A stretch of DNA of 63,834 bases, counting the filler, from Reticulomyxa filosa (taxonomy: Eukaryota > Protista > Foraminifera): NCBI GenBank assembly GCA_000512085.1. It is 19 parts of 19 records of this genome, joined end to end, with 100 filler letters (N's around TTAATTAATTAA, not from the genome) between each part and the next. Parts side by side here need not be neighbours in the genome. Positions count along the whole stretch, not along the records: positions 6,904 to 12,672 come from ASPP01017786.1; 18 more parts are not named here. The stretch is one strand, 5' to 3'. Below are positions 6,904 to 12,849 of this stretch, in pieces (position 1 is the first letter of the stretch; the number at the start of each line of letters is the position of its first letter). The notes below the pieces were generated by a model. It saw nothing but the letters and a program-made list of their open reading frames with translations. It did no database searches and was not told the DNA's origin. The position numbers and the translations under genes are program-made.

Positions 6904-7140
6904 GAAGAAGAAGAAGAAGAAGAAGAAGAAGAAGAGGAGGAGGAGGATGAAGAGGATGAAGAAGAAGATACCCCTAGACACGGCGATGAGGAAGACGAAG
7001 ATGATATTGCCGTTGGATATGATGATACTTTTGCTCAATTGACGCGGGATGATGTCCCTCTCGTCGTTCATCCAGCTGCAAGAAAAATCAATATTGTGCA
7101 AAGTCATAGCTTGCCACCAAAATACTTTCCAAAATCTTAA
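6904..7140 (+). CDS. 3' end of an unknown protein with a poly-Glu/Asp acidic tract
   Basis: Open frame from the contig edge: (E)n DEEDEEEDTPRHGDEEDEDDIAVGYDDDTFAQLTRDDVPLVVHPAARKINIVQSHSLPPKYFPKS*. Confidence 0.5.
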   Translation, partial: EEEEEEEEEEEEEEDEEDEEEDTPRHGDEEDEDDIAVGYDDTFAQLTRDDVPLVVHPAARKINIVQSHSLPPKYFPKS

Positions 7141-8334
7141 ATGCGTTCCATACCCTTTGGGTTCATCGATTATATCATTTCGTGCTCTGGCTCTTTTTAT
7201 TTAGTTTTTTGTGTGTTCTTTTTTTTTTCTTTAATCTTGTAAACAACCGATGGCGTTTTGTTTTTTTTTTATTATATCATAGATTTTGATATTGATTTCA
7301 CAAACAATAAAATATTCGTCTTTTTTTTCCTTTGTTTTTTTGTTCTTTTTCAATTGAATTTTGACTTTGGTTGTAGTTTTTCTTCTGTCTTAAACAATCT
7401 TTTTTTGCTATTCTCTTTTGTTTTCTTGCAGTGACTTAGCTTACACCATCATCAAAATTTTGTTTTTTATTTTTTGTTTGCATGCTCGAATGTTTCATCA
7501 TTTACTGGCGATAATGTTATTTTTTATTTGTAGTATTCACTGCACTATAGTAGCTTTTATCTAAGATAAATAAAGTATTAATTAATTTATCATACCATAT
7601 CAAAACAAAATAAAAATCCTTTTAAACTCTCATGAGTTAGTTCGATTTTTATTCAAAAGGTTAGGCAATTTTTTGCTTTCAGGAGCTTGTTTGTTGTTCA
7701 GTTAACAATTAATTTCATAATATTATTTTGAGTTTCAATAGCATACACTAATTCACTGACTCCATTTTATTGTTTTTGGCTTTGAATTGTTTTAACTTTT
7801 AAAGCGAAATAATGGATTGAAAAGTCGAACAAGGCAAATATTTGTAATTTGATGAATGATTCCATAAATCAAGCACAACGCAAGTTAGATTTTGACTTTT
7901 GCTTTAGATGAACTAAATTATAAAAAAAACTAAAAAATCAACATTACGAAAGACATCGCATTAATACAAACAACAGTTTTAAACGGAAAAATCGGTAATA
8001 AATTTTCAAAATTAAAAACTGTCCAAAAAACGTTACGTATCAAAACTAAATGAAGAAAACAACAATAAGACTAATTTTGTGTTTCATGAAGAAAATCGAT
8101 TATCCATAGACAGCACAACAGATTTGTATATTTTTTTTTCAAACTACTGCATAGTTTTTAATTATGGCAACAACTTCTTTAGTGACAGCATAAATGAAAA
8201 GTAAACGTTCAATGAAAAAGTGGATATTAAAAAAAATACACAGCTTAAAAATTTTTGCAAAAAAAAAATATCTATACAAAAAACATTTGCCAACTATCCA
8301 GATAAAGCGATTTAGTTTTTTTTTGTTTGTTTTC

Positions 8335-9445
8335 CTAATTGCCTACCATACGCGGCACAAACAAGACCCAATCTAAAGGTTCATTAATTCTTTTACACAA
8401 TTCAACACTTTCCATAATTAATTTACTCATCAGGGCTTCCTTTTCCAAGGCCTGCAATTTTTCTTGCCTCTTTCTCTCCTCTTCTTCTTGGTGTTTTCTC
8501 TCAGCCTCAATTTTGGCCAGTTCCTCTTCGCTGAGTTTAACTTCAATCACTGCCGGTATTTCATCAATTTGAACAGGTGGAGGAACTATAATTTCTTCTC
8601 TTTCTTCTTCTTCATCTGCACTAAGAATTGCCTTTTCTTCATCATCTTCTTCAGGCTCTTCTTCAATCGCAGCTATAAAGTCCTCTGCAGCATAACATCA
8701 ACCCATCAAACAAGCAAAAAAAAGGATGAGAAAAGAGGATTTTTGAACGCGAATGGACAATATATAAAAAATATCGTACTTGGTTCGTTTGAATCTATTT
8801 TCGTTAGTTGAGCTTTGTTGTACAGACTTCTTTGTCTCAATCGTTCCTCTCGTTCTTTGCGCTTTCTTTCTGCTTCCTTTTCTCTTCGGTGCTCTTCTTC
8901 CACTTGCATTTCATGTTGTAATCGTTTTGTCTCTTCGCTTTCCTTTTTCTTTATTTGTGCGAAATATGCCTTTTCCGCTTCCAACGCCTTCATGAATGCT
9001 TCTTCGCTGATTGTATCGCTTCCATCGACCACCACTGATTTTTTTACTCGCCCGATCCAATCTTGAATTGTGACCTTTGTTTAATCCGTCGCATTACAGG
9101 ACATCACAAAACAATACAAAATTTTTTGGGTTCTTTTTGTTATTGCATATTTCTCAAAGTTAAAAAACAACGCAACTTTTTCAAGGGTTTCAGAAACGAT
9201 AGTTACTCCGAAAGGCTTTAGCATATCTTGCATTTGTGGCTGCCACGAGACATGTTTCATGCGTTCGACATTTTTCTTGCTACGAATATTAGGAGGGGTG
9301 CTCGTCACCATAGTGTCCGGTGTCCATATAAAGAACACCCAATGGCTTCTTCGGAACCTCCCTTCTCCAAAAGACAGACGCATCAGGCCATACAGCACCT
9401 GGTCATACTTCAATTCGCTATCAATGTAGATGTACGTGTACATAC

Positions 9446-9480
<35 letters not shown>

Positions 9481-10372
9481 ATATGTATATATAAACATTG
9501 TAACTAAAATCTATTCCAAATGTAGGCAAGCAAACAAAATAAACAAAAAGACAAGATGCGTCACTCAACTCTCTCAGAGAAGACAAGTCTCCCAAGCCCC
9601 ATTTTCCAAAGGCTTCAGTTCTTTGGTGGAGGGGTAAAACAAGGCCCAGTTTACTGGCGATGTTTCGGCATGAATGGCAGCAACGACTCGTTCAGGAGTC
9701 CATGGTCGTTCATTGCTCCAATCGTCTTCTTTTCTTTTTTTTTTCTTTCCACCTTTCTTTCCTTTCTTTCCTATTTGTTTTAACTTTTTTTTTTTTTTTT
9801 TGTGGGTACATTGTGTGATGTATTGCAATGGACATTGTTGTTGTTGTGGTTTTTTTTGAATAGTTGTTATTTGAAAACAAACAAAATGACAATGAATCAA
9901 CTTGCGGCATCACTTGCACTAGCAGCCTTTTCTTTTTCTTGTCTCAGTTTCTCTTCTTCTTCTTCTTGCTTTTTTTTCGCGGCAATGAGCAACTCTCGCT
10001 CTCTGGCCAACTCCTCCTGTTGTCTGCGTTTTTCTTGCAACTCTGCTTCTTTTTGGCGACGCAGCTCCTCTTCACGCTCTTTCCTGCGCTTCTCCTCTTC
10101 ATCCGCAATCGCCTTTCTTCTCAGTTCTGCCTCCGCTTCGCGTTTCAGGCGGGCTTCCTCTTCCATGTTTGCTTGCATTTCTAGCAATCTTTTCTTATGC
10201 TGTTCCGCTTCTTTCATCGCTTCGGCCATCCTTCGAGAGTAGTCTTGTTTCATCTGCATTTTTTTATTTTTTATTTTTTTTTCTACGCGTGTCGGTGTTT
10301 GTCCTTTGTTACTATAATATTCAAATGCAGATAAATAATAAAACAATATATAAAATATTATTATTATTATTA

Positions 10373-10413
<41 letters not shown>

Positions 10414-11839
10414 TTATTGTTTATGATTTGTTATTCAAAGAACAAATGTGAAAAATAACTGTGTTCAAATCAGAAAGGTTCGCTTTTCCTTGTCCTTTGA
10501 TATTGTCCGTGACAAAAATACCGCGCAACTGTTCAAACACCCATTCCACGGTGAACAGATCTCTTTGTGTCACCACCAATGGCGCGTGACAATGTCCAAT
10601 CACTTCTTGTGCAATATGCAGTTTTTTATTTTCTTTCGCTCTTTGCAGCGGTTTGGGATGTTCTTTCGAAAGGCATTACATCAACAACAACAACAACAAC
10701 AAAAAGTGCATAATGCACATAACATGTGAATATACATTTTATTACTTATGCATATATATATATATATATGTATACATATATATTTATATATATGTGCATA
10801 TATAGTATGTACCAATTTGTAGACACACAAAAACAAATAACAATAAAAGTGCACATAAATATAATACTTTCGCCATTAAAATGGACAAAAATGTTTTTAT
10901 GTCGAGCAAATTGTCCCTCGCCCACTTCGATTTGGATCATTCCAAACATGACTTTTGAGTCGTCCAGATACTTTTGCATTTCATCGACACCGGCGGTTCC
11001 TCGGCCGACCAAATCGAAGGGACACAAGCCAATCAATTGTTCGTACGAGAAAGCTTGCATTTCGTCTGCAAATTGCTCATGAAACTTTTGCCCAGATTTG
11101 GTCTGGGCCAGAGAGGCATTCATGCCGGCCCCACTGCTGCCACTTCCTCCTCCTCCTCCTGTTGATGGTTTATCTTTATTCGTGAGGTTGCTGTTACTGT
11201 TGTCGTTACTATTGTTGTTGACTGCTTTGCTATTGCTATCCTTTTTGTCTAGTTTCAGTTCCTCTGTTTGCTCCTCTCCCAATATGTCTGTCAACGACCC
11301 GTTGTTCGCTTTCAAATGCTCGCTCAGATTCAGTGATTGCGATGACAATCGCTCTCGTCGTTTCGCTTTCTCAAAGTCTTTGTCGCGCATTATTCGACGG
11401 ATTGAATCTTGTCTTACAAATAACCCACGTTTGTCTTCGCACTGTTTTTTTTTAAAAAAAAAATGTAAAGAATTAAAAAGGGGAAAATTTTTTTAACAAG
11501 TGGATATTAAAATATGAATTCAACAAATTTTTTGTTTTAACGTATAATTTTCCTTTTTTTTTTCTTCCTTTCACTCTTATTATTAAACACACACACAAAA
11601 AAAAAGGTCCCTTTGTAACTAAAAAAAAAAAAAAAAATAGCCATTCATTGAACTTTAAAGTATGTCTTTCCATCGATTTCACCACTATGCTCTCCTACAG
11701 AAGTTCCGTCCGTTAGTTCAACGCCATACCACTTCCCTTCAGCAAAATGCACCGTACCATAATACTTCACCTCACCCTCACGATCTCGAGAAAGCAAGAC
11801 ATGAGAACCTAATGGATAGGTCGATTCTTCAGTTGACAT
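8335..11839 (-). CDS. CAP-Gly domain protein with two coactosin/ADF-H-like domains and charged coiled-coil/SAH segments (multi-exon)
   Basis: Exons 1-2 give a CAP-Gly domain (GEVKYYGTVHFAEGKWYGVEL...GEHSGEIDGKTYFK|CEDKRGLFVR). Two homologous blocks (GRGTAGVDEMQKYLDDSKVMFGMIQIEVGEGQFARHKNIFVHF and LKYDQVLYGLMRLSFGEGRFRRSHWVFFIW) resemble ADF-H/coactosin. E/K/R-rich helices separate them. Confidence 0.8.
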
Positions 11840-12143
11840 TTAGTTTCAATTATATTTCAACGTTCCACTTTTGAACTTTTCTCTGGTAACCCCAAAAAAA
11901 TTAGTTTTTGACTCAAATAAAAATAACTGCAATTTGAACACATTTCTCATTCTTTGATTTGATCATAAAACAAAAAATAACTAATAAGAATAAGATCTTG
12001 AACAAGACATCATGTATTCTTTGATTATTCCATAAATACTACAGTTAACTTTAAAGAGTTTGTTTTTAATTTTCCAATGAAAAGAACGTTGAAACAGTTT
12101 GAATTGAGTTAATTTTTTGTTGACAAACCCCGAGCGCTGAGTC
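11840..12143. promoter_or_regulatory. Putative short bidirectional promoter between the CAP-Gly gene and PNO1
   Basis: Divergent ATGs at 11839 (-) and 12144 (+), separated by about 300 bp of AT-rich DNA. Confidence 0.45.
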
Positions 12144-12608
12144 ATGTCTAAAGAGAATCCAAGTGTAATGGAAGAAAATTCAAATTTAGTTGCAGACAGT
12201 AAAATAGAAGAAATGACGGATTTACAAAATTATGAAAATGAAGAATTTGCGTTGAACGAGAACGACCAAGAAAAAGACAATGACAACAACAAAGAAGAAG
12301 AACCCACAAAAGAGAAAGAGGAGAGCAAAAAAAAGAAAACAAGTAAACCAAGCAAAGGGAATAACGCAGAAATAACAAAAAAATGGAAAAAAATCGCATC
12401 AATTCCGCTGCCTTCGGAACAGGTGACATTCAAACCGCTGAGTCACAAAAAGCTTGCCATTGGTGAGCGTAGTTATCGAAGCATCAAAGTACCGGGACAC
12501 AGGATGATGCATATGCAAAGACTTTGGAAAGAGATTTGTGACCCCATCATTACACAATTGAAATTACAAATCCGAATGAATTCCAGCAAAAATTTGATCG
12601 AAATTCGA
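12144..12608 (+). CDS. PNO1: Pre-rRNA processing KH-domain protein PNO1/Dim2, first exon (3'-partial)
   Basis: RSIKVPGHRMMHMQRLWKEICDPIITQLKLQIRMNSSKNLIEIR matches the PNO1 N-terminal KH-like motif (RKVxVPxHRxxPLKxxWxxIxxPIVExLKLQIRxN). A GT donor follows. Confidence 0.85.
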
Positions 12609-12849
12609 GTTAACACCAATCAATTAAAAAAATAAATAATAACGAAATTCCGTTAGAGTTTTTTTTTTTTTTNNNNNNNNNNNNNNNNNNNNNNNNNNNN
12701 NNNNNNNNNNNNNNNNTTAATTAATTAANNNNNNNNNNNNNNNNNNNNNNNNNNNNNNNNNNNNNNNNNNNNTATCTAGTTGTTCTGTGCTTGTCTTCTT
12801 TTAAAATACAATTTTTTTTATCTCGATGATGAATGATGTTAAATTAATT

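What the first reader, a model, noticed from the sequence alone, without database searches (positions are those of the whole stretch)
8335..11839. CAP-Gly + tandem ADF-H/coactosin-like domains: candidate actin-microtubule linker
Seen: an N-terminal CAP-Gly domain, then two mutually homologous blocks (AFSYE..DLVGRGTAGVDEMQKYLDDSKVMFGMIQIEVGEGQFARHKNIFVHFNGE and VNWALFYP..LKPL..GLGDLSSLRDELKYDQVLYGLMRLSFGEGRFRRSHWVFFIWTPD), each followed by a long E/K/R-rich helix. Established: CAP-Gly domains bind tubulin/EB C-terminal tails. Coactosin/drebrin/Abp1-type ADF-H domains have the W.lF.Y...G.GG..EL...L.D..V.YG..R...KxVFI.W pattern and bind F-actin. Inference: one polypeptide could bridge microtubules and actin, with SAH/coiled-coil spacers. 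I do not know this architecture from model organisms, and it would suit the fast microtubule/actin-based reticulopodial transport of foraminifera. The CAP-Gly GKNDG motif is diverged to GEHSG, so tubulin binding is not guaranteed.
Basis: partly seen in the sequence, partly recalled or inferred. Interest (0 to 1): 0.8.

Follow-up and report, generated by a model that had tools for sequence, protein, structure and literature searches.

The report
CAP-Gly fused to stretched tandem ADF-H
A Reticulomyxa filosa gene, split into three nameless pieces in the public gene calls, encodes a microtubule-type CAP-Gly domain fused to two actin-binding ADF-H domains held apart by long charged helices; it is a plausible but unproven actin-microtubule coupler.

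Summary
One minus-strand gene of 8 exons (11839 to 8335, about 800 codons) encodes four things:
- a CAP-Gly domain (Pfam 54 bits on exon 1 alone);
- a low-complexity linker;
- two ADF-H domains of the drebrin/Abp1/coactosin class;
- three E/K/R-rich helices.

Exon 2 is one open frame. It carries the last part of the CAP-Gly domain, the linker and the start of ADF-H 1, so the fusion does not rest on a splice guess. A Tara ocean scaffold (L003) shows the same fusion with the intron at the same site.

1. The ADF-H part belongs to a large, unnamed protist family of tandem ADF-H proteins: 263 representatives, usually without CAP-Gly.
2. In that family domain 1 lacks its first helix and strand. A conserved helix-strand at the extreme C-terminus, present here too, is predicted to fill that slot.
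3. Exon 5 is one base short of frame in an A4 run, either an assembly error or a real break.

The function as an actin-microtubule linker is inferred. The CAP-Gly motif is GEHSG (GDNSG in the relative) instead of GKNDG. Domain 2 has lost the lysine that matches coactosin Lys75.

This is a new variant of known kinds, of moderate interest.

The parts
11654..11839 (-). Exon 1: start codon and N-terminal 62 residues, the CAP-Gly domain up to ...GKTYFK. Ligand motif GEHSG.
   Evidence: Pfam CAP_GLY 54.1 bits, profile positions 2-51 of 65. Nearest solved relative is CLIPR-59 1whh, E 1.2e-08, which has GKHDG at this place. GT donor at 11653-11652.
11400..11441 (-). First 14 codons of exon 2: the C-terminal part of the CAP-Gly domain (CEDKRGLFVRQDSI).
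   Evidence: Directly follows the acceptor ...acag, in phase 0. The same split (SYFE | CEANRGIF) is seen in L003.
11094..11399 (-). Exon 2, middle: low-complexity linker of about 100 residues with basic, Asn/Ser-rich and Gly-rich runs.
   Evidence: Translation and composition scan. Colinear with L003 at 41% identity over the whole exon.
10868..11093 (-). Exon 2, end: ADF-H domain 1, N-terminal part (helix, then PFDLVGRG...HFNGE). Ends in phase 1.
   Evidence: Pfam Cofilin_ADF 14.1 bits, profile positions 32-81. 75% identical to the uninterrupted paralogue P0007, which passes Pfam at 24.2 bits and folds as ADF-H.
10460..10662 (-). Exon 3 (boundary corrected): ADF-H domain 1, C-terminal part (HPKPLQRAKENKK...FVTDN...).
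   Evidence: Aligns to P0007 residues 127-184. Exactly one residue lies between the two exon matches, which is the split Lys codon. Conserved in L001 and L002.
9902..10253 (-). Exon 4: ER/K-type helix 1, 117 residues.
   Evidence: E+K+R 0.5-0.75, hydrophobic 0.07-0.25, no Gly or Pro, dense i/i+3,4 ion pairs. The equivalent stretch is continuous with the domains in L001, L002 and L003.
9570..9770 (-). Exon 5: poly-Lys patch (9768-9730), then helix 1, strand 1 and the G.G loop of ADF-H domain 2. One base short of frame in the A4 run 9605-9602.
   Evidence: Frame A reads ...NWALFYPSTKELKPLE and frame B reads KWGLGDLSSLR. L002 reads KPVKWGHGSISELR without a shift. The exon lengths sum to 2402, one short of a multiple of three.
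9177..9417 (-). Exon 6: core of ADF-H domain 2.
   Evidence: Pfam Cofilin_ADF 14.9 bits, profile positions 48-83. 54% identical to the uninterrupted domain in L001, which scores 46.5 bits.
8780..9074 (-). Exon 7: last strand and helix of ADF-H domain 2, then ER/K-type helix 2.
   Evidence: The junction ...TLEK | VTIQDWIGRVKK... matches the continuous L002 and L001 sequence. Composition.
8413..8684 (-). Exon 8, first part: acidic, proline-containing stretch and ER/K-type helix 3.
   Evidence: Translation and composition. Conserved in L001.
8335..8412 (-). Exon 8, end: C-terminal helix-strand element (ESVELCKRINEPLDWVLFVPR...) and the stop codon TAG.
   Evidence: A profile of 88 family C-termini hits it at 9.9 bits, E 3.6e-05 for a single target. 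The same profile hits domain 2's own first helix-strand at 23.8 bits. 98 of 132 two-domain relatives carry the element after domain 2.

Best explanation
This is one R. filosa gene of 8 exons and about 800 codons. It encodes an N-terminal CAP-Gly domain joined by a disordered linker to a lineage-specific, stretched member of a widespread protist family of tandem ADF-H proteins of the drebrin/Abp1/coactosin class.

Proposed mechanism (inferred):
- The two ADF-H domains bind the sides of actin filaments.
- ER/K-type single helices hold the two domains roughly 16 nm apart: about 105 helical residues on the way out, and about 65 plus 50 on the way back.
- The C-terminal helix-strand element returns to domain 1 and supplies the first helix and strand that this domain lacks. 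That would either close the molecule into a two-headed rod or chain molecules head to tail.
- The CAP-Gly domain adds a second attachment point. The simplest candidates are tubulin or EB-type C-terminal tails, which would couple actin to microtubules.

Shown here: gene structure, domain identities, family membership, and recurrence of the fusion. Inferred: all binding activities and the geometry.
For: Gene model:
- All eight exons have GT..AG borders and consistent phases.
- Junctions are confirmed by continuous sequence in relatives L001, L002, L003, L004 and P0007.

CAP-Gly domain: 54.1 bits on exon 1. A single exon bridges the end of the CAP-Gly domain and ADF-H 1.

Second instance of the fusion, on Tara scaffold L003:
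- Its CAP-Gly exon scores 42.6 bits.
- It is 52% and 41% identical to exons 1 and 2 here.
- The intron sits at the same site.

ADF-H identity:
- The L001 domain 2 scores 46.5 bits.
- Uninterrupted domain 1 in P0005 scores 29.2 bits and in P0007 24.2 bits.
- The AF2 model of P0007 domain 1 has pLDDT 90.6, and all 50 best Foldseek matches are ADF-H folds, coactosin first.
- Domain 2 of the family model matches coactosin-like protein at Z 14.5, rmsd 2.8, 127 residues aligned.
- The family profile hits drebrin-like 1x67 at 1e-14, Entamoeba coactosin 4liz at 1.5e-14 and drebrin at 8e-11. No twinfilin chain reaches 0.01.

Family: 263 representatives at E <= 0.001; 132 of 161 fetched proteins have two domains.

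C-terminal element:
- Conserved across the family.
- In the AF2 full-length model of P0042 its pLDDT is about 95.
- Complex prediction of domain 1 with the C-terminal 37 residues of P0042 scored 0.74, against 0.07 for the best of 3 controls. That mark was reached by 51 of 78 solved complexes and 2 of 108 mismatched pairs. The runs agree in at least 93% of contacts, and the partner's pLDDT is at least 66.
- The strand 354-359 lies between domain-1 strands 24-30 and 46-52.

ER/K composition.
Against: - No RNA evidence could be obtained, and the joined model was not searched or folded.
- Exon 5 is one base out of frame in the only available copy.
- The CAP-Gly motif is GEHSG here and GDNSG in L003. 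The canonical Lys is replaced by an acidic residue, and L003 also lacks the usual Phe/Trp pair. Binding of acidic EEY/F tails is therefore doubtful.
- Domain 2 has His (Trp in L001) at the nearly invariant Lys that aligns with coactosin Lys75, and Pro at a nearly invariant Gly (read directly).
- The window's exons taken singly stay under the Pfam cut-off for Cofilin_ADF.
- The complementation test was run on a distant family member cut into two chains. The tool's calibration does not cover peptides or predicted chains.
- Relatives L001 and L002 show no CAP-Gly domain upstream.
Confidence: 0.55

Rival explanations
1. It is an actin-only organiser. The protein crosslinks or rules actin filaments through its two ADF-H heads, and the divergent CAP-Gly domain binds something other than tubulin or EB tails, such as another cytoskeletal or membrane adaptor. 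No microtubule link exists.
For: GEHSG and GDNSG replace GKNDG in both known copies, and L003 lacks the aromatic pair. From established knowledge, some CAP-Gly domains, such as the third one of CYLD, bind other ligands. The base family works without any CAP-Gly domain.
Against: The domain still scores far above the Pfam cut-off, and here it keeps the F..G.W and YF.C....G.FVR elements. Two lineages have kept the fusion.
Confidence: 0.3
2. The gene is broken. The missing base in the A run of exon 5 is real, so the locus is a recent pseudogene or yields only a truncated protein with CAP-Gly, ADF-H 1 and helix 1.
For: The only available sequence is out of frame. The gene calls on record stop at 9574, the stop codon reached after the shift. 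A paralogue exists in the same genome (L004).
Against: Exons 6-8 downstream keep open frames, splice signals and 53-64% identity to relatives, including the C-terminal element. The shift lies in a homopolymer, a typical assembly error. No other defect was found.
Confidence: 0.12
3. These are separate genes: the CAP-Gly exon and the downstream blocks belong to different transcription units, as in the three gene calls on record.
For: The calls on record split the region into genes of 372, 209 and 286 residues and omit exon 1.
Against: Exon 2 is one open frame from the CAP-Gly end to ADF-H 1. L002 and L003 have helix 1 and the start of domain 2 in one open frame. L001 and L002 have domain 2 and helix 2 in one open frame. 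The splits on record coincide with the frame shift and with introns.
Confidence: 0.03

Closest known systems
Drebrin, mAbp1 (drebrin-like protein, HIP-55) and yeast Abp1
   Same: The ADF-H domain is of the same sequence class: the family profile hits 1x67 at 1e-14 and 5y1z at 8e-11. It is followed by a charged helical region. From established knowledge these proteins bind filament sides and do not sever, and drebrin couples actin to microtubule plus ends through EB3.
   Different: Those proteins have one ADF-H domain, SH3 or other tails, and no CAP-Gly domain. Here there are two ADF-H domains, a C-terminal complementing element, and a CAP-Gly domain in the same chain.
Coactosin and coactosin-like protein
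   Same: It is the best structural match for both domain types. The Lys aligned with Lys75 is kept in domain 1.
   Different: Coactosin is a single 140-residue domain. Domain 2 here has His at that Lys.
Twinfilin
   Same: Two ADF-H domains in one chain.
   Different: There is no sequence-level match: no twinfilin chain reaches 0.01 with the family profile. Twinfilin domains are each complete. The family here has a first domain without helix 1 and strand 1, plus a C-terminal replacement.
CLIP-170, CLIPR-59 and p150Glued CAP-Gly proteins
   Same: The CAP-Gly fold signature is present; the nearest solved relatives are CLIPR-59 and CLIP-4.
   Different: GEHSG stands in place of GKNDG/GKHDG, with a two-residue insertion before it. 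There is a single CAP-Gly domain, no zinc knuckles and no EEY/F tail.
Known actin-microtubule crosslinkers (spectraplakins, GAS2-like proteins, CLIP-170 with formin)
   Same: The proposed role is the same: one molecule or complex touching both polymers.
   Different: Those use CH, GAR and SxIP modules or separate partners. None combines CAP-Gly with ADF-H (my knowledge).

Membership tests
CAP-Gly domain (PF01302) | Profile score above the curated cut-off | tested here: met
   54.1 bits against a cut-off of 26.5, on exon 1 alone.
CAP-Gly domain (PF01302) | GKNDG ligand-binding motif | tested here: not met
   GEHSG aligns with GKHDG/GKNDG of CLIPR-59, CLIP-4 and CLIP-115. L003 has GDNSG.
CAP-Gly domain (PF01302) | C-terminal YF.C....G.FVR segment completing the fold | tested here: met
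   ...TYFK | CEDKRGLFVRQDSI reads across the exon 1/2 splice. Not scored as one piece, because the joined model was not searched.
CAP-Gly domain (PF01302) | Binding of EEY/F tails of tubulin or EB | not testable with these tools
   Needs a binding assay.
ADF-H domain (PF00241) | Profile score above the curated cut-off | tested here: inconclusive
   The window's exons taken singly score 14.1 and 14.9 bits, under the 22.4 cut-off. Uninterrupted relatives pass: L001 domain 2 at 46.5 bits, P0005 at 29.2, P0007 at 24.2, P0042 at 91.5 with two stretches.
ADF-H domain (PF00241) | ADF-H fold | tested here: met
   Tested on relatives. The P0007 domain 1 model has pLDDT 90.6 and only ADF-H folds among its 50 best matches. 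P0042 domain 2 matches coactosin-like protein at Z 14.5. The window's own domains could not be folded because they are split by introns.
Coactosin/drebrin/Abp1 class of ADF-H | Closest sequence relatives belong to this class rather than cofilin, twinfilin or GMF | tested here: met
   The profile of 91 domains hits 1x67, 4liz, 5y1z and coactosin-like at 1e-14 to 1e-09, and cofilins at 1e-06 or weaker. No twinfilin chain reaches 0.01.
Coactosin/drebrin/Abp1 class of ADF-H | Lys equivalent to coactosin Lys75 (F-actin binding; from memory of the coactosin literature) | tested here: inconclusive
   Domain 1 keeps it (FARHK). Domain 2 has His (FRRSH). The column is nearly invariant Lys in the family.
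Unnamed protist family of tandem ADF-H proteins | Two ADF-H domains in tandem, the first without helix 1 and strand 1 | tested here: met
   132 of 161 fetched proteins have two domains. The P0042 model shows four strands in domain 1 and five in domain 2. The window has no NW.LF segment before domain 1.
Unnamed protist family of tandem ADF-H proteins | C-terminal helix plus W-strand element close to the stop codon | tested here: met
   EPLDWVLFVPR lies 4 residues before the stop codon and is hit by the profile at E 3.6e-05. 98 of 132 relatives have the element.
ER/K single alpha-helix | High E+K+R, few hydrophobic residues, no helix breakers, i/i+4 ion pairs | tested here: met
   Tested by composition only. 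No structure was predicted for these stretches.
Twinfilin | Sequence membership in the twinfilin ADF-H classes | tested here: not met
   No twinfilin chain at E <= 0.01 with the family profile. Structural matches to twinfilin rank below coactosin, drebrin and cofilin.

The most novel reading that the evidence does not exclude
The tandem ADF-H family is a closed, effectively circularly permuted pair: the extreme C-terminus supplies helix 1 and strand 1 of the first domain. Foraminifera stretched both connecting arms with matched ER/K helices into a rod of about 16 nm with two actin-binding heads. They then added a CAP-Gly domain, which makes this a dedicated spacer that ties actin filaments to microtubules in reticulopodia.
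Probability: 0.3. Interest if true: 0.75.

Novelty: new variant of a known kind. Interest (0 to 1): 0.55.

Why it matters
Reticulopodia of foraminifera move organelles and membrane at high speed along microtubules, with actin closely associated. No molecule that joins the two systems is known there.

This gene gives a concrete candidate that can be expressed and tested. It also shows that the public annotation hides the candidate by splitting it into three unnamed genes.

Separately, the tandem ADF-H family behind it is large, spans distant protist groups (a prasinophyte alga, a diplonemid, foraminifera) and is unnamed. Its predicted C-terminal complementation of the first domain would be an unusual topology for the ADF-H fold, and it is directly testable.

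Tried and rejected
Splicing and the A-run could therefore not be checked with reads, and read laying was not used.
- Word search with the CAP-Gly exon found no candidates.
- A scan of metagenome contigs with the domain-1 alignment gave 306 pattern matches, none confirmed.
- Exact look-up of the exon 2 open frame: not on record.
- A third full ADF-H domain after the C-terminal W motif: three-frame reading of 6904-8352 shows no further coding sequence. Many relatives also end right after the motif, so I dropped this idea.
- Homology between the C-terminal halves of the two domains: BLASTP found nothing. hhalign gave only a colinear 12-column match at E 0.31. Not significant at this depth.
- The first MAFFT alignment of domain-2 fragments (A4) misplaced the N-terminal pieces and was replaced by a fragment-aware alignment.
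I replaced it with a local phmmer of the CAP-Gly exon against the 150 fetched proteins, which gave no hit at E <= 10.
- The ESM Atlas search gave only weak leads to Cofilin_ADF clusters, with scores 0.78-0.81.
- Rfam, tRNA: nothing.
- The joined spliced protein was not searched, folded or printed.
Full report
**Origin of the piece.** The piece 6904-12672 is the whole of Reticulomyxa filosa contig ASPP01017786.1 (assembly GCA_000512085.1, 5769 bases). This came from an exact look-up of the neighbouring open frame. The gene calls on record for this contig split the region studied here into three minus-strand genes. In window coordinates they are 8139-9443 (372 residues), 9574-10229 (209 residues) and 10321-11390 (286 residues). 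None has a Pfam hit on record and none includes the CAP-Gly exon.

**Gene model.** I read the minus strand and translated exon by exon. This gives eight exons with GT..AG borders and consistent phases:
- exon 1: 11839-11654
- exon 2: 11441-10868
- exon 3: 10662-10460
- exon 4: 10253-9902
- exon 5: 9770-9570
- exon 6: 9417-9177
- exon 7: 9074-8780
- exon 8: 8684-8335, ending in TAG

The exon lengths sum to 2402 bases, one short of a multiple of three. The missing base lies in exon 5.

Up to ...KELKPLE the protein is in one frame. From KWGLGDLSSLR on it is in the next frame, and the switch falls in the A4 run 9605-9602. Relatives read straight through this point (L002...KPVKWGHGSISELR). Everything downstream is intact and conserved.

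Every search used single exons by reference, or natural uninterrupted relatives.

**Junctions confirmed by relatives.** The word search with exon 2 found two exon-sized relatives. Their contigs, L001 (an ENA metagenome) and L002 (a Logan assembly), carry the same gene order. The profile search added three more:
- P0007, on R. filosa contig ASPP01009302.1 (L004). It is a paralogue in the same genome.
- P0003, on a Tara ocean scaffold (L003).
- Several relatives with domain 1 uninterrupted.

These settle the junctions as follows:
- Exons 2 and 3: the end of exon 2 aligns to P0007 residues 75-125 (75% identity) and exon 3 to residues 127-184. One residue lies between them, the split Lys codon. 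This moved the start of exon 3 from my first guess to 10662.
- Exons 4 and 5: helix 1 and the start of domain 2 are one open frame in L002 and L003.
- Exons 6 and 7: the junction is continuous in L001 and L002.

**CAP-Gly domain.** Exon 1 alone scores 54.1 bits against PF01302, whose cut-off is 26.5. The missing end of the domain (CEDKRGLFVRQDSI) is the first thing encoded by exon 2. That exon then runs without interruption through a linker of about 100 residues into ADF-H domain 1, so the fusion is visible in a single exon.

Scaffold L003 has the same arrangement, with the intron at the same codon:
- Its CAP-Gly exon scores 42.6 bits.
- It is 52% identical to exon 1 here and 41% identical over exon 2.
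- It continues through domain 1, an ER/K helix, a poly-Lys patch and the start of domain 2 before the scaffold ends.

The nearest solved relatives are CLIPR-59, CLIP-4 and CLIP-115. Where they have GKHDG or GKNDG, this protein has GEHSG and L003 has GDNSG. L003 also lacks the Phe/Trp pair upstream.

From established knowledge, the Lys and Asn of this motif contact the C-terminal EEY/F of tubulin and EB proteins. An acidic residue at the Lys position, kept in both copies, makes canonical tail binding doubtful.

**ADF-H domains.** Taken singly, the window's exons give Cofilin_ADF as their best Pfam family, at matching profile positions but under the cut-off: 14.1 and 14.9 bits against 22.4. The uninterrupted relatives decide the matter:
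- L001 domain 2 (54% identical to exon 6) scores 46.5 bits.
- Domain 1 scores 29.2 bits in P0005 and 24.2 bits in P0007.
- An AlphaFold2 model of P0007 domain 1, built with 91 aligned domains, has mean pLDDT 90.6. All 50 best Foldseek matches in the PDB are ADF-H folds, with coactosin-like protein first.
- The two blocks are homologous to each other.
- A profile of 91 domains hits drebrin-like protein 1x67 (1e-14), Entamoeba coactosin 4liz (1.5e-14), drebrin (8e-11) and coactosin-like protein (1e-09). Cofilins follow at 1e-06 or weaker, and no twinfilin chain reaches 0.01.

**Conserved residues.** The nine nearly invariant family residues are all present in domain 1. Domain 2 differs at two of them:
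- It has His where the family has Lys. That column aligns with Lys75 of coactosin-like protein, which from memory is critical for F-actin binding.
- It has Pro where the family has Gly.

L001, L002 and L004 share this variant (His, or Trp in L001).

**The family behind it.** The profile of the first part of domain 1 found 263 representatives at E <= 0.001 among 1.84 billion proteins, most with two matched stretches. Of the 161 fetched proteins matched by a local jackhmmer of P0007 domain 1, 132 have exactly two domains.
- Members come from a prasinophyte alga (Pyramimonas), a diplonemid (Lacrimia), MMETSP transcriptomes and many marine metagenomes. Where a name exists it is 'hypothetical protein'.
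- Some members carry PH, gelsolin or Calx-beta domains.
- None of the 150 best representatives has a CAP-Gly domain.
- L001 has no CAP-Gly exon in the 1.7 kb upstream, where other genes lie, and L002 has none in its 450 bases upstream.

The CAP-Gly domain is thus an addition seen so far only in the window and in L003. I found no paper that describes a CAP-Gly plus ADF-H protein.

**A conserved C-terminal element.** After domain 2 and its helix, 98 of 132 two-domain relatives have a short helix followed by an (N)W.L(F) strand. Many of them end 7-9 residues later. The window ends the same way...ESVELCKRINEPLDWVLFVPR, then four residues and the stop codon.

A profile of 88 such tails hits the window's tail at E 3.6e-05 for a single target. 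It hits the first helix-strand of the window's own domain 2 more strongly, at 23.8 bits. The element is therefore a copy of the N-terminal part of an ADF-H domain.

Domain 1 lacks exactly that part. In the AlphaFold2 model of a compact full-length member (P0042, 361 residues, pLDDT 89.9), domain 1 has four strands and domain 2 has five. The C-terminal helix 339-347 and strand 355-360 are modelled at pLDDT about 95.

I tested the obvious idea with complex prediction, using domain 1 (residues 12-125) and the last 37 residues of P0042:
- The score was 0.74, against 0.07 for the best of 3 controls.
- That mark was reached by 51 of 78 solved complexes and 2 of 108 mismatched pairs.
- The runs agree in at least 93% of contacts, and the partner's pLDDT is at least 66.
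- The strand 354-359 lies between domain-1 strands 24-30 and 46-52, that is, in the slot of strand 1.

This supports complementation of domain 1 by the C-terminus but does not prove it. The calibration does not cover peptides or cut chains, and the test was run on a distant member, not on the window's protein.

**Spacers.** Three stretches fit ER/K-type single helices better than coiled coils. They have E+K+R up to 0.75, hydrophobic residues at 0.07-0.14, no Gly or Pro, and dense i/i+3,4 ion pairs.
- Ordinary family members have about 50-60 residues between the two domains.
- The window, L001, L003 and L004 have 115-125 helical residues plus a poly-Lys patch.
- At 0.15 nm per residue, the outgoing helix is about 16 nm and the two returning helices together about 17 nm.

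That match fits a closed antiparallel rod with one ADF-H head at each end. This geometry is my inference and rests on no tool result.

**Verdict.** The architecture is real, has been kept in two organisms, is undescribed as far as I can find, and is hidden by the public annotation.

The proposed linker role is reasonable but unproven. It is weakened by the acidic substitution in the CAP-Gly motif and by the lost Lys in domain 2.

I rate the chances as follows:
- a single-gene CAP-Gly plus tandem ADF-H protein: about 0.9
- actin binding by at least domain 1: about 0.7
- a direct microtubule or EB link: about 0.35

Noticed in passing
window 12144-12635 (+): This is the first exon of a PNO1 (Dim2) homologue. 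It lies head to head with the CAP-Gly gene, 304 bases between the two start codons. phmmer against the PDB hits yeast and human PNO1 at about 4e-06. The KH domain would lie beyond the end of the contig.
   Followed up: partly
window 8139-11390 (L006 1236-4487): The gene calls on record for ASPP01017786.1 cut this gene into three genes of 372, 209 and 286 residues. None has a Pfam hit, and the CAP-Gly exon is left out. One cut coincides with the exon 5 frame shift.
   Followed up: yes
L004 1-3240 (R. filosa ASPP01009302.1): A paralogue in the same genome has ADF-H 1, an ER/K helix of about 115 residues, a poly-Lys patch, ADF-H 2 and the C-terminal W element. Its 5' end is cut by the start of the contig, so whether it has a CAP-Gly domain cannot be seen.
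   Followed up: partly
window 9442-9493, 10356-10418, 10752-10804, 6904-6968: (AT)n and (TAT)n microsatellites sit inside introns 5, 3 and 2. A (GAA)n run lies at the contig end.
   Followed up: no
P0002, P0004, P0005, P0006 (N-terminal 40-60 residues before domain 1): Relatives without a CAP-Gly domain share a conserved N-terminal motif (F[FW]ATG.DG.V[IL]KLH.R[IV]ASIPI) that the window's protein lacks. Its role is unknown.
   Followed up: no
P0070, P0086, P0089 and P0015: Other members of the tandem ADF-H family carry PH, gelsolin-repeat or Calx-beta domains. The family seems to accept added modules readily.
   Followed up: partly
L001 4093-4275: In L001 the open frame runs on for about 60 residues after the C-terminal W element, in DNA of 26% G+C where such a stop-free run is unlikely by chance. 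The window stops 4 residues after the element.
   Followed up: no
L001 746-997 (-): An open frame next to the L001 homologue has a precomputed Pfam hit to Peptidase_S74. The origin of this AT-rich contig is unknown.
   Followed up: no
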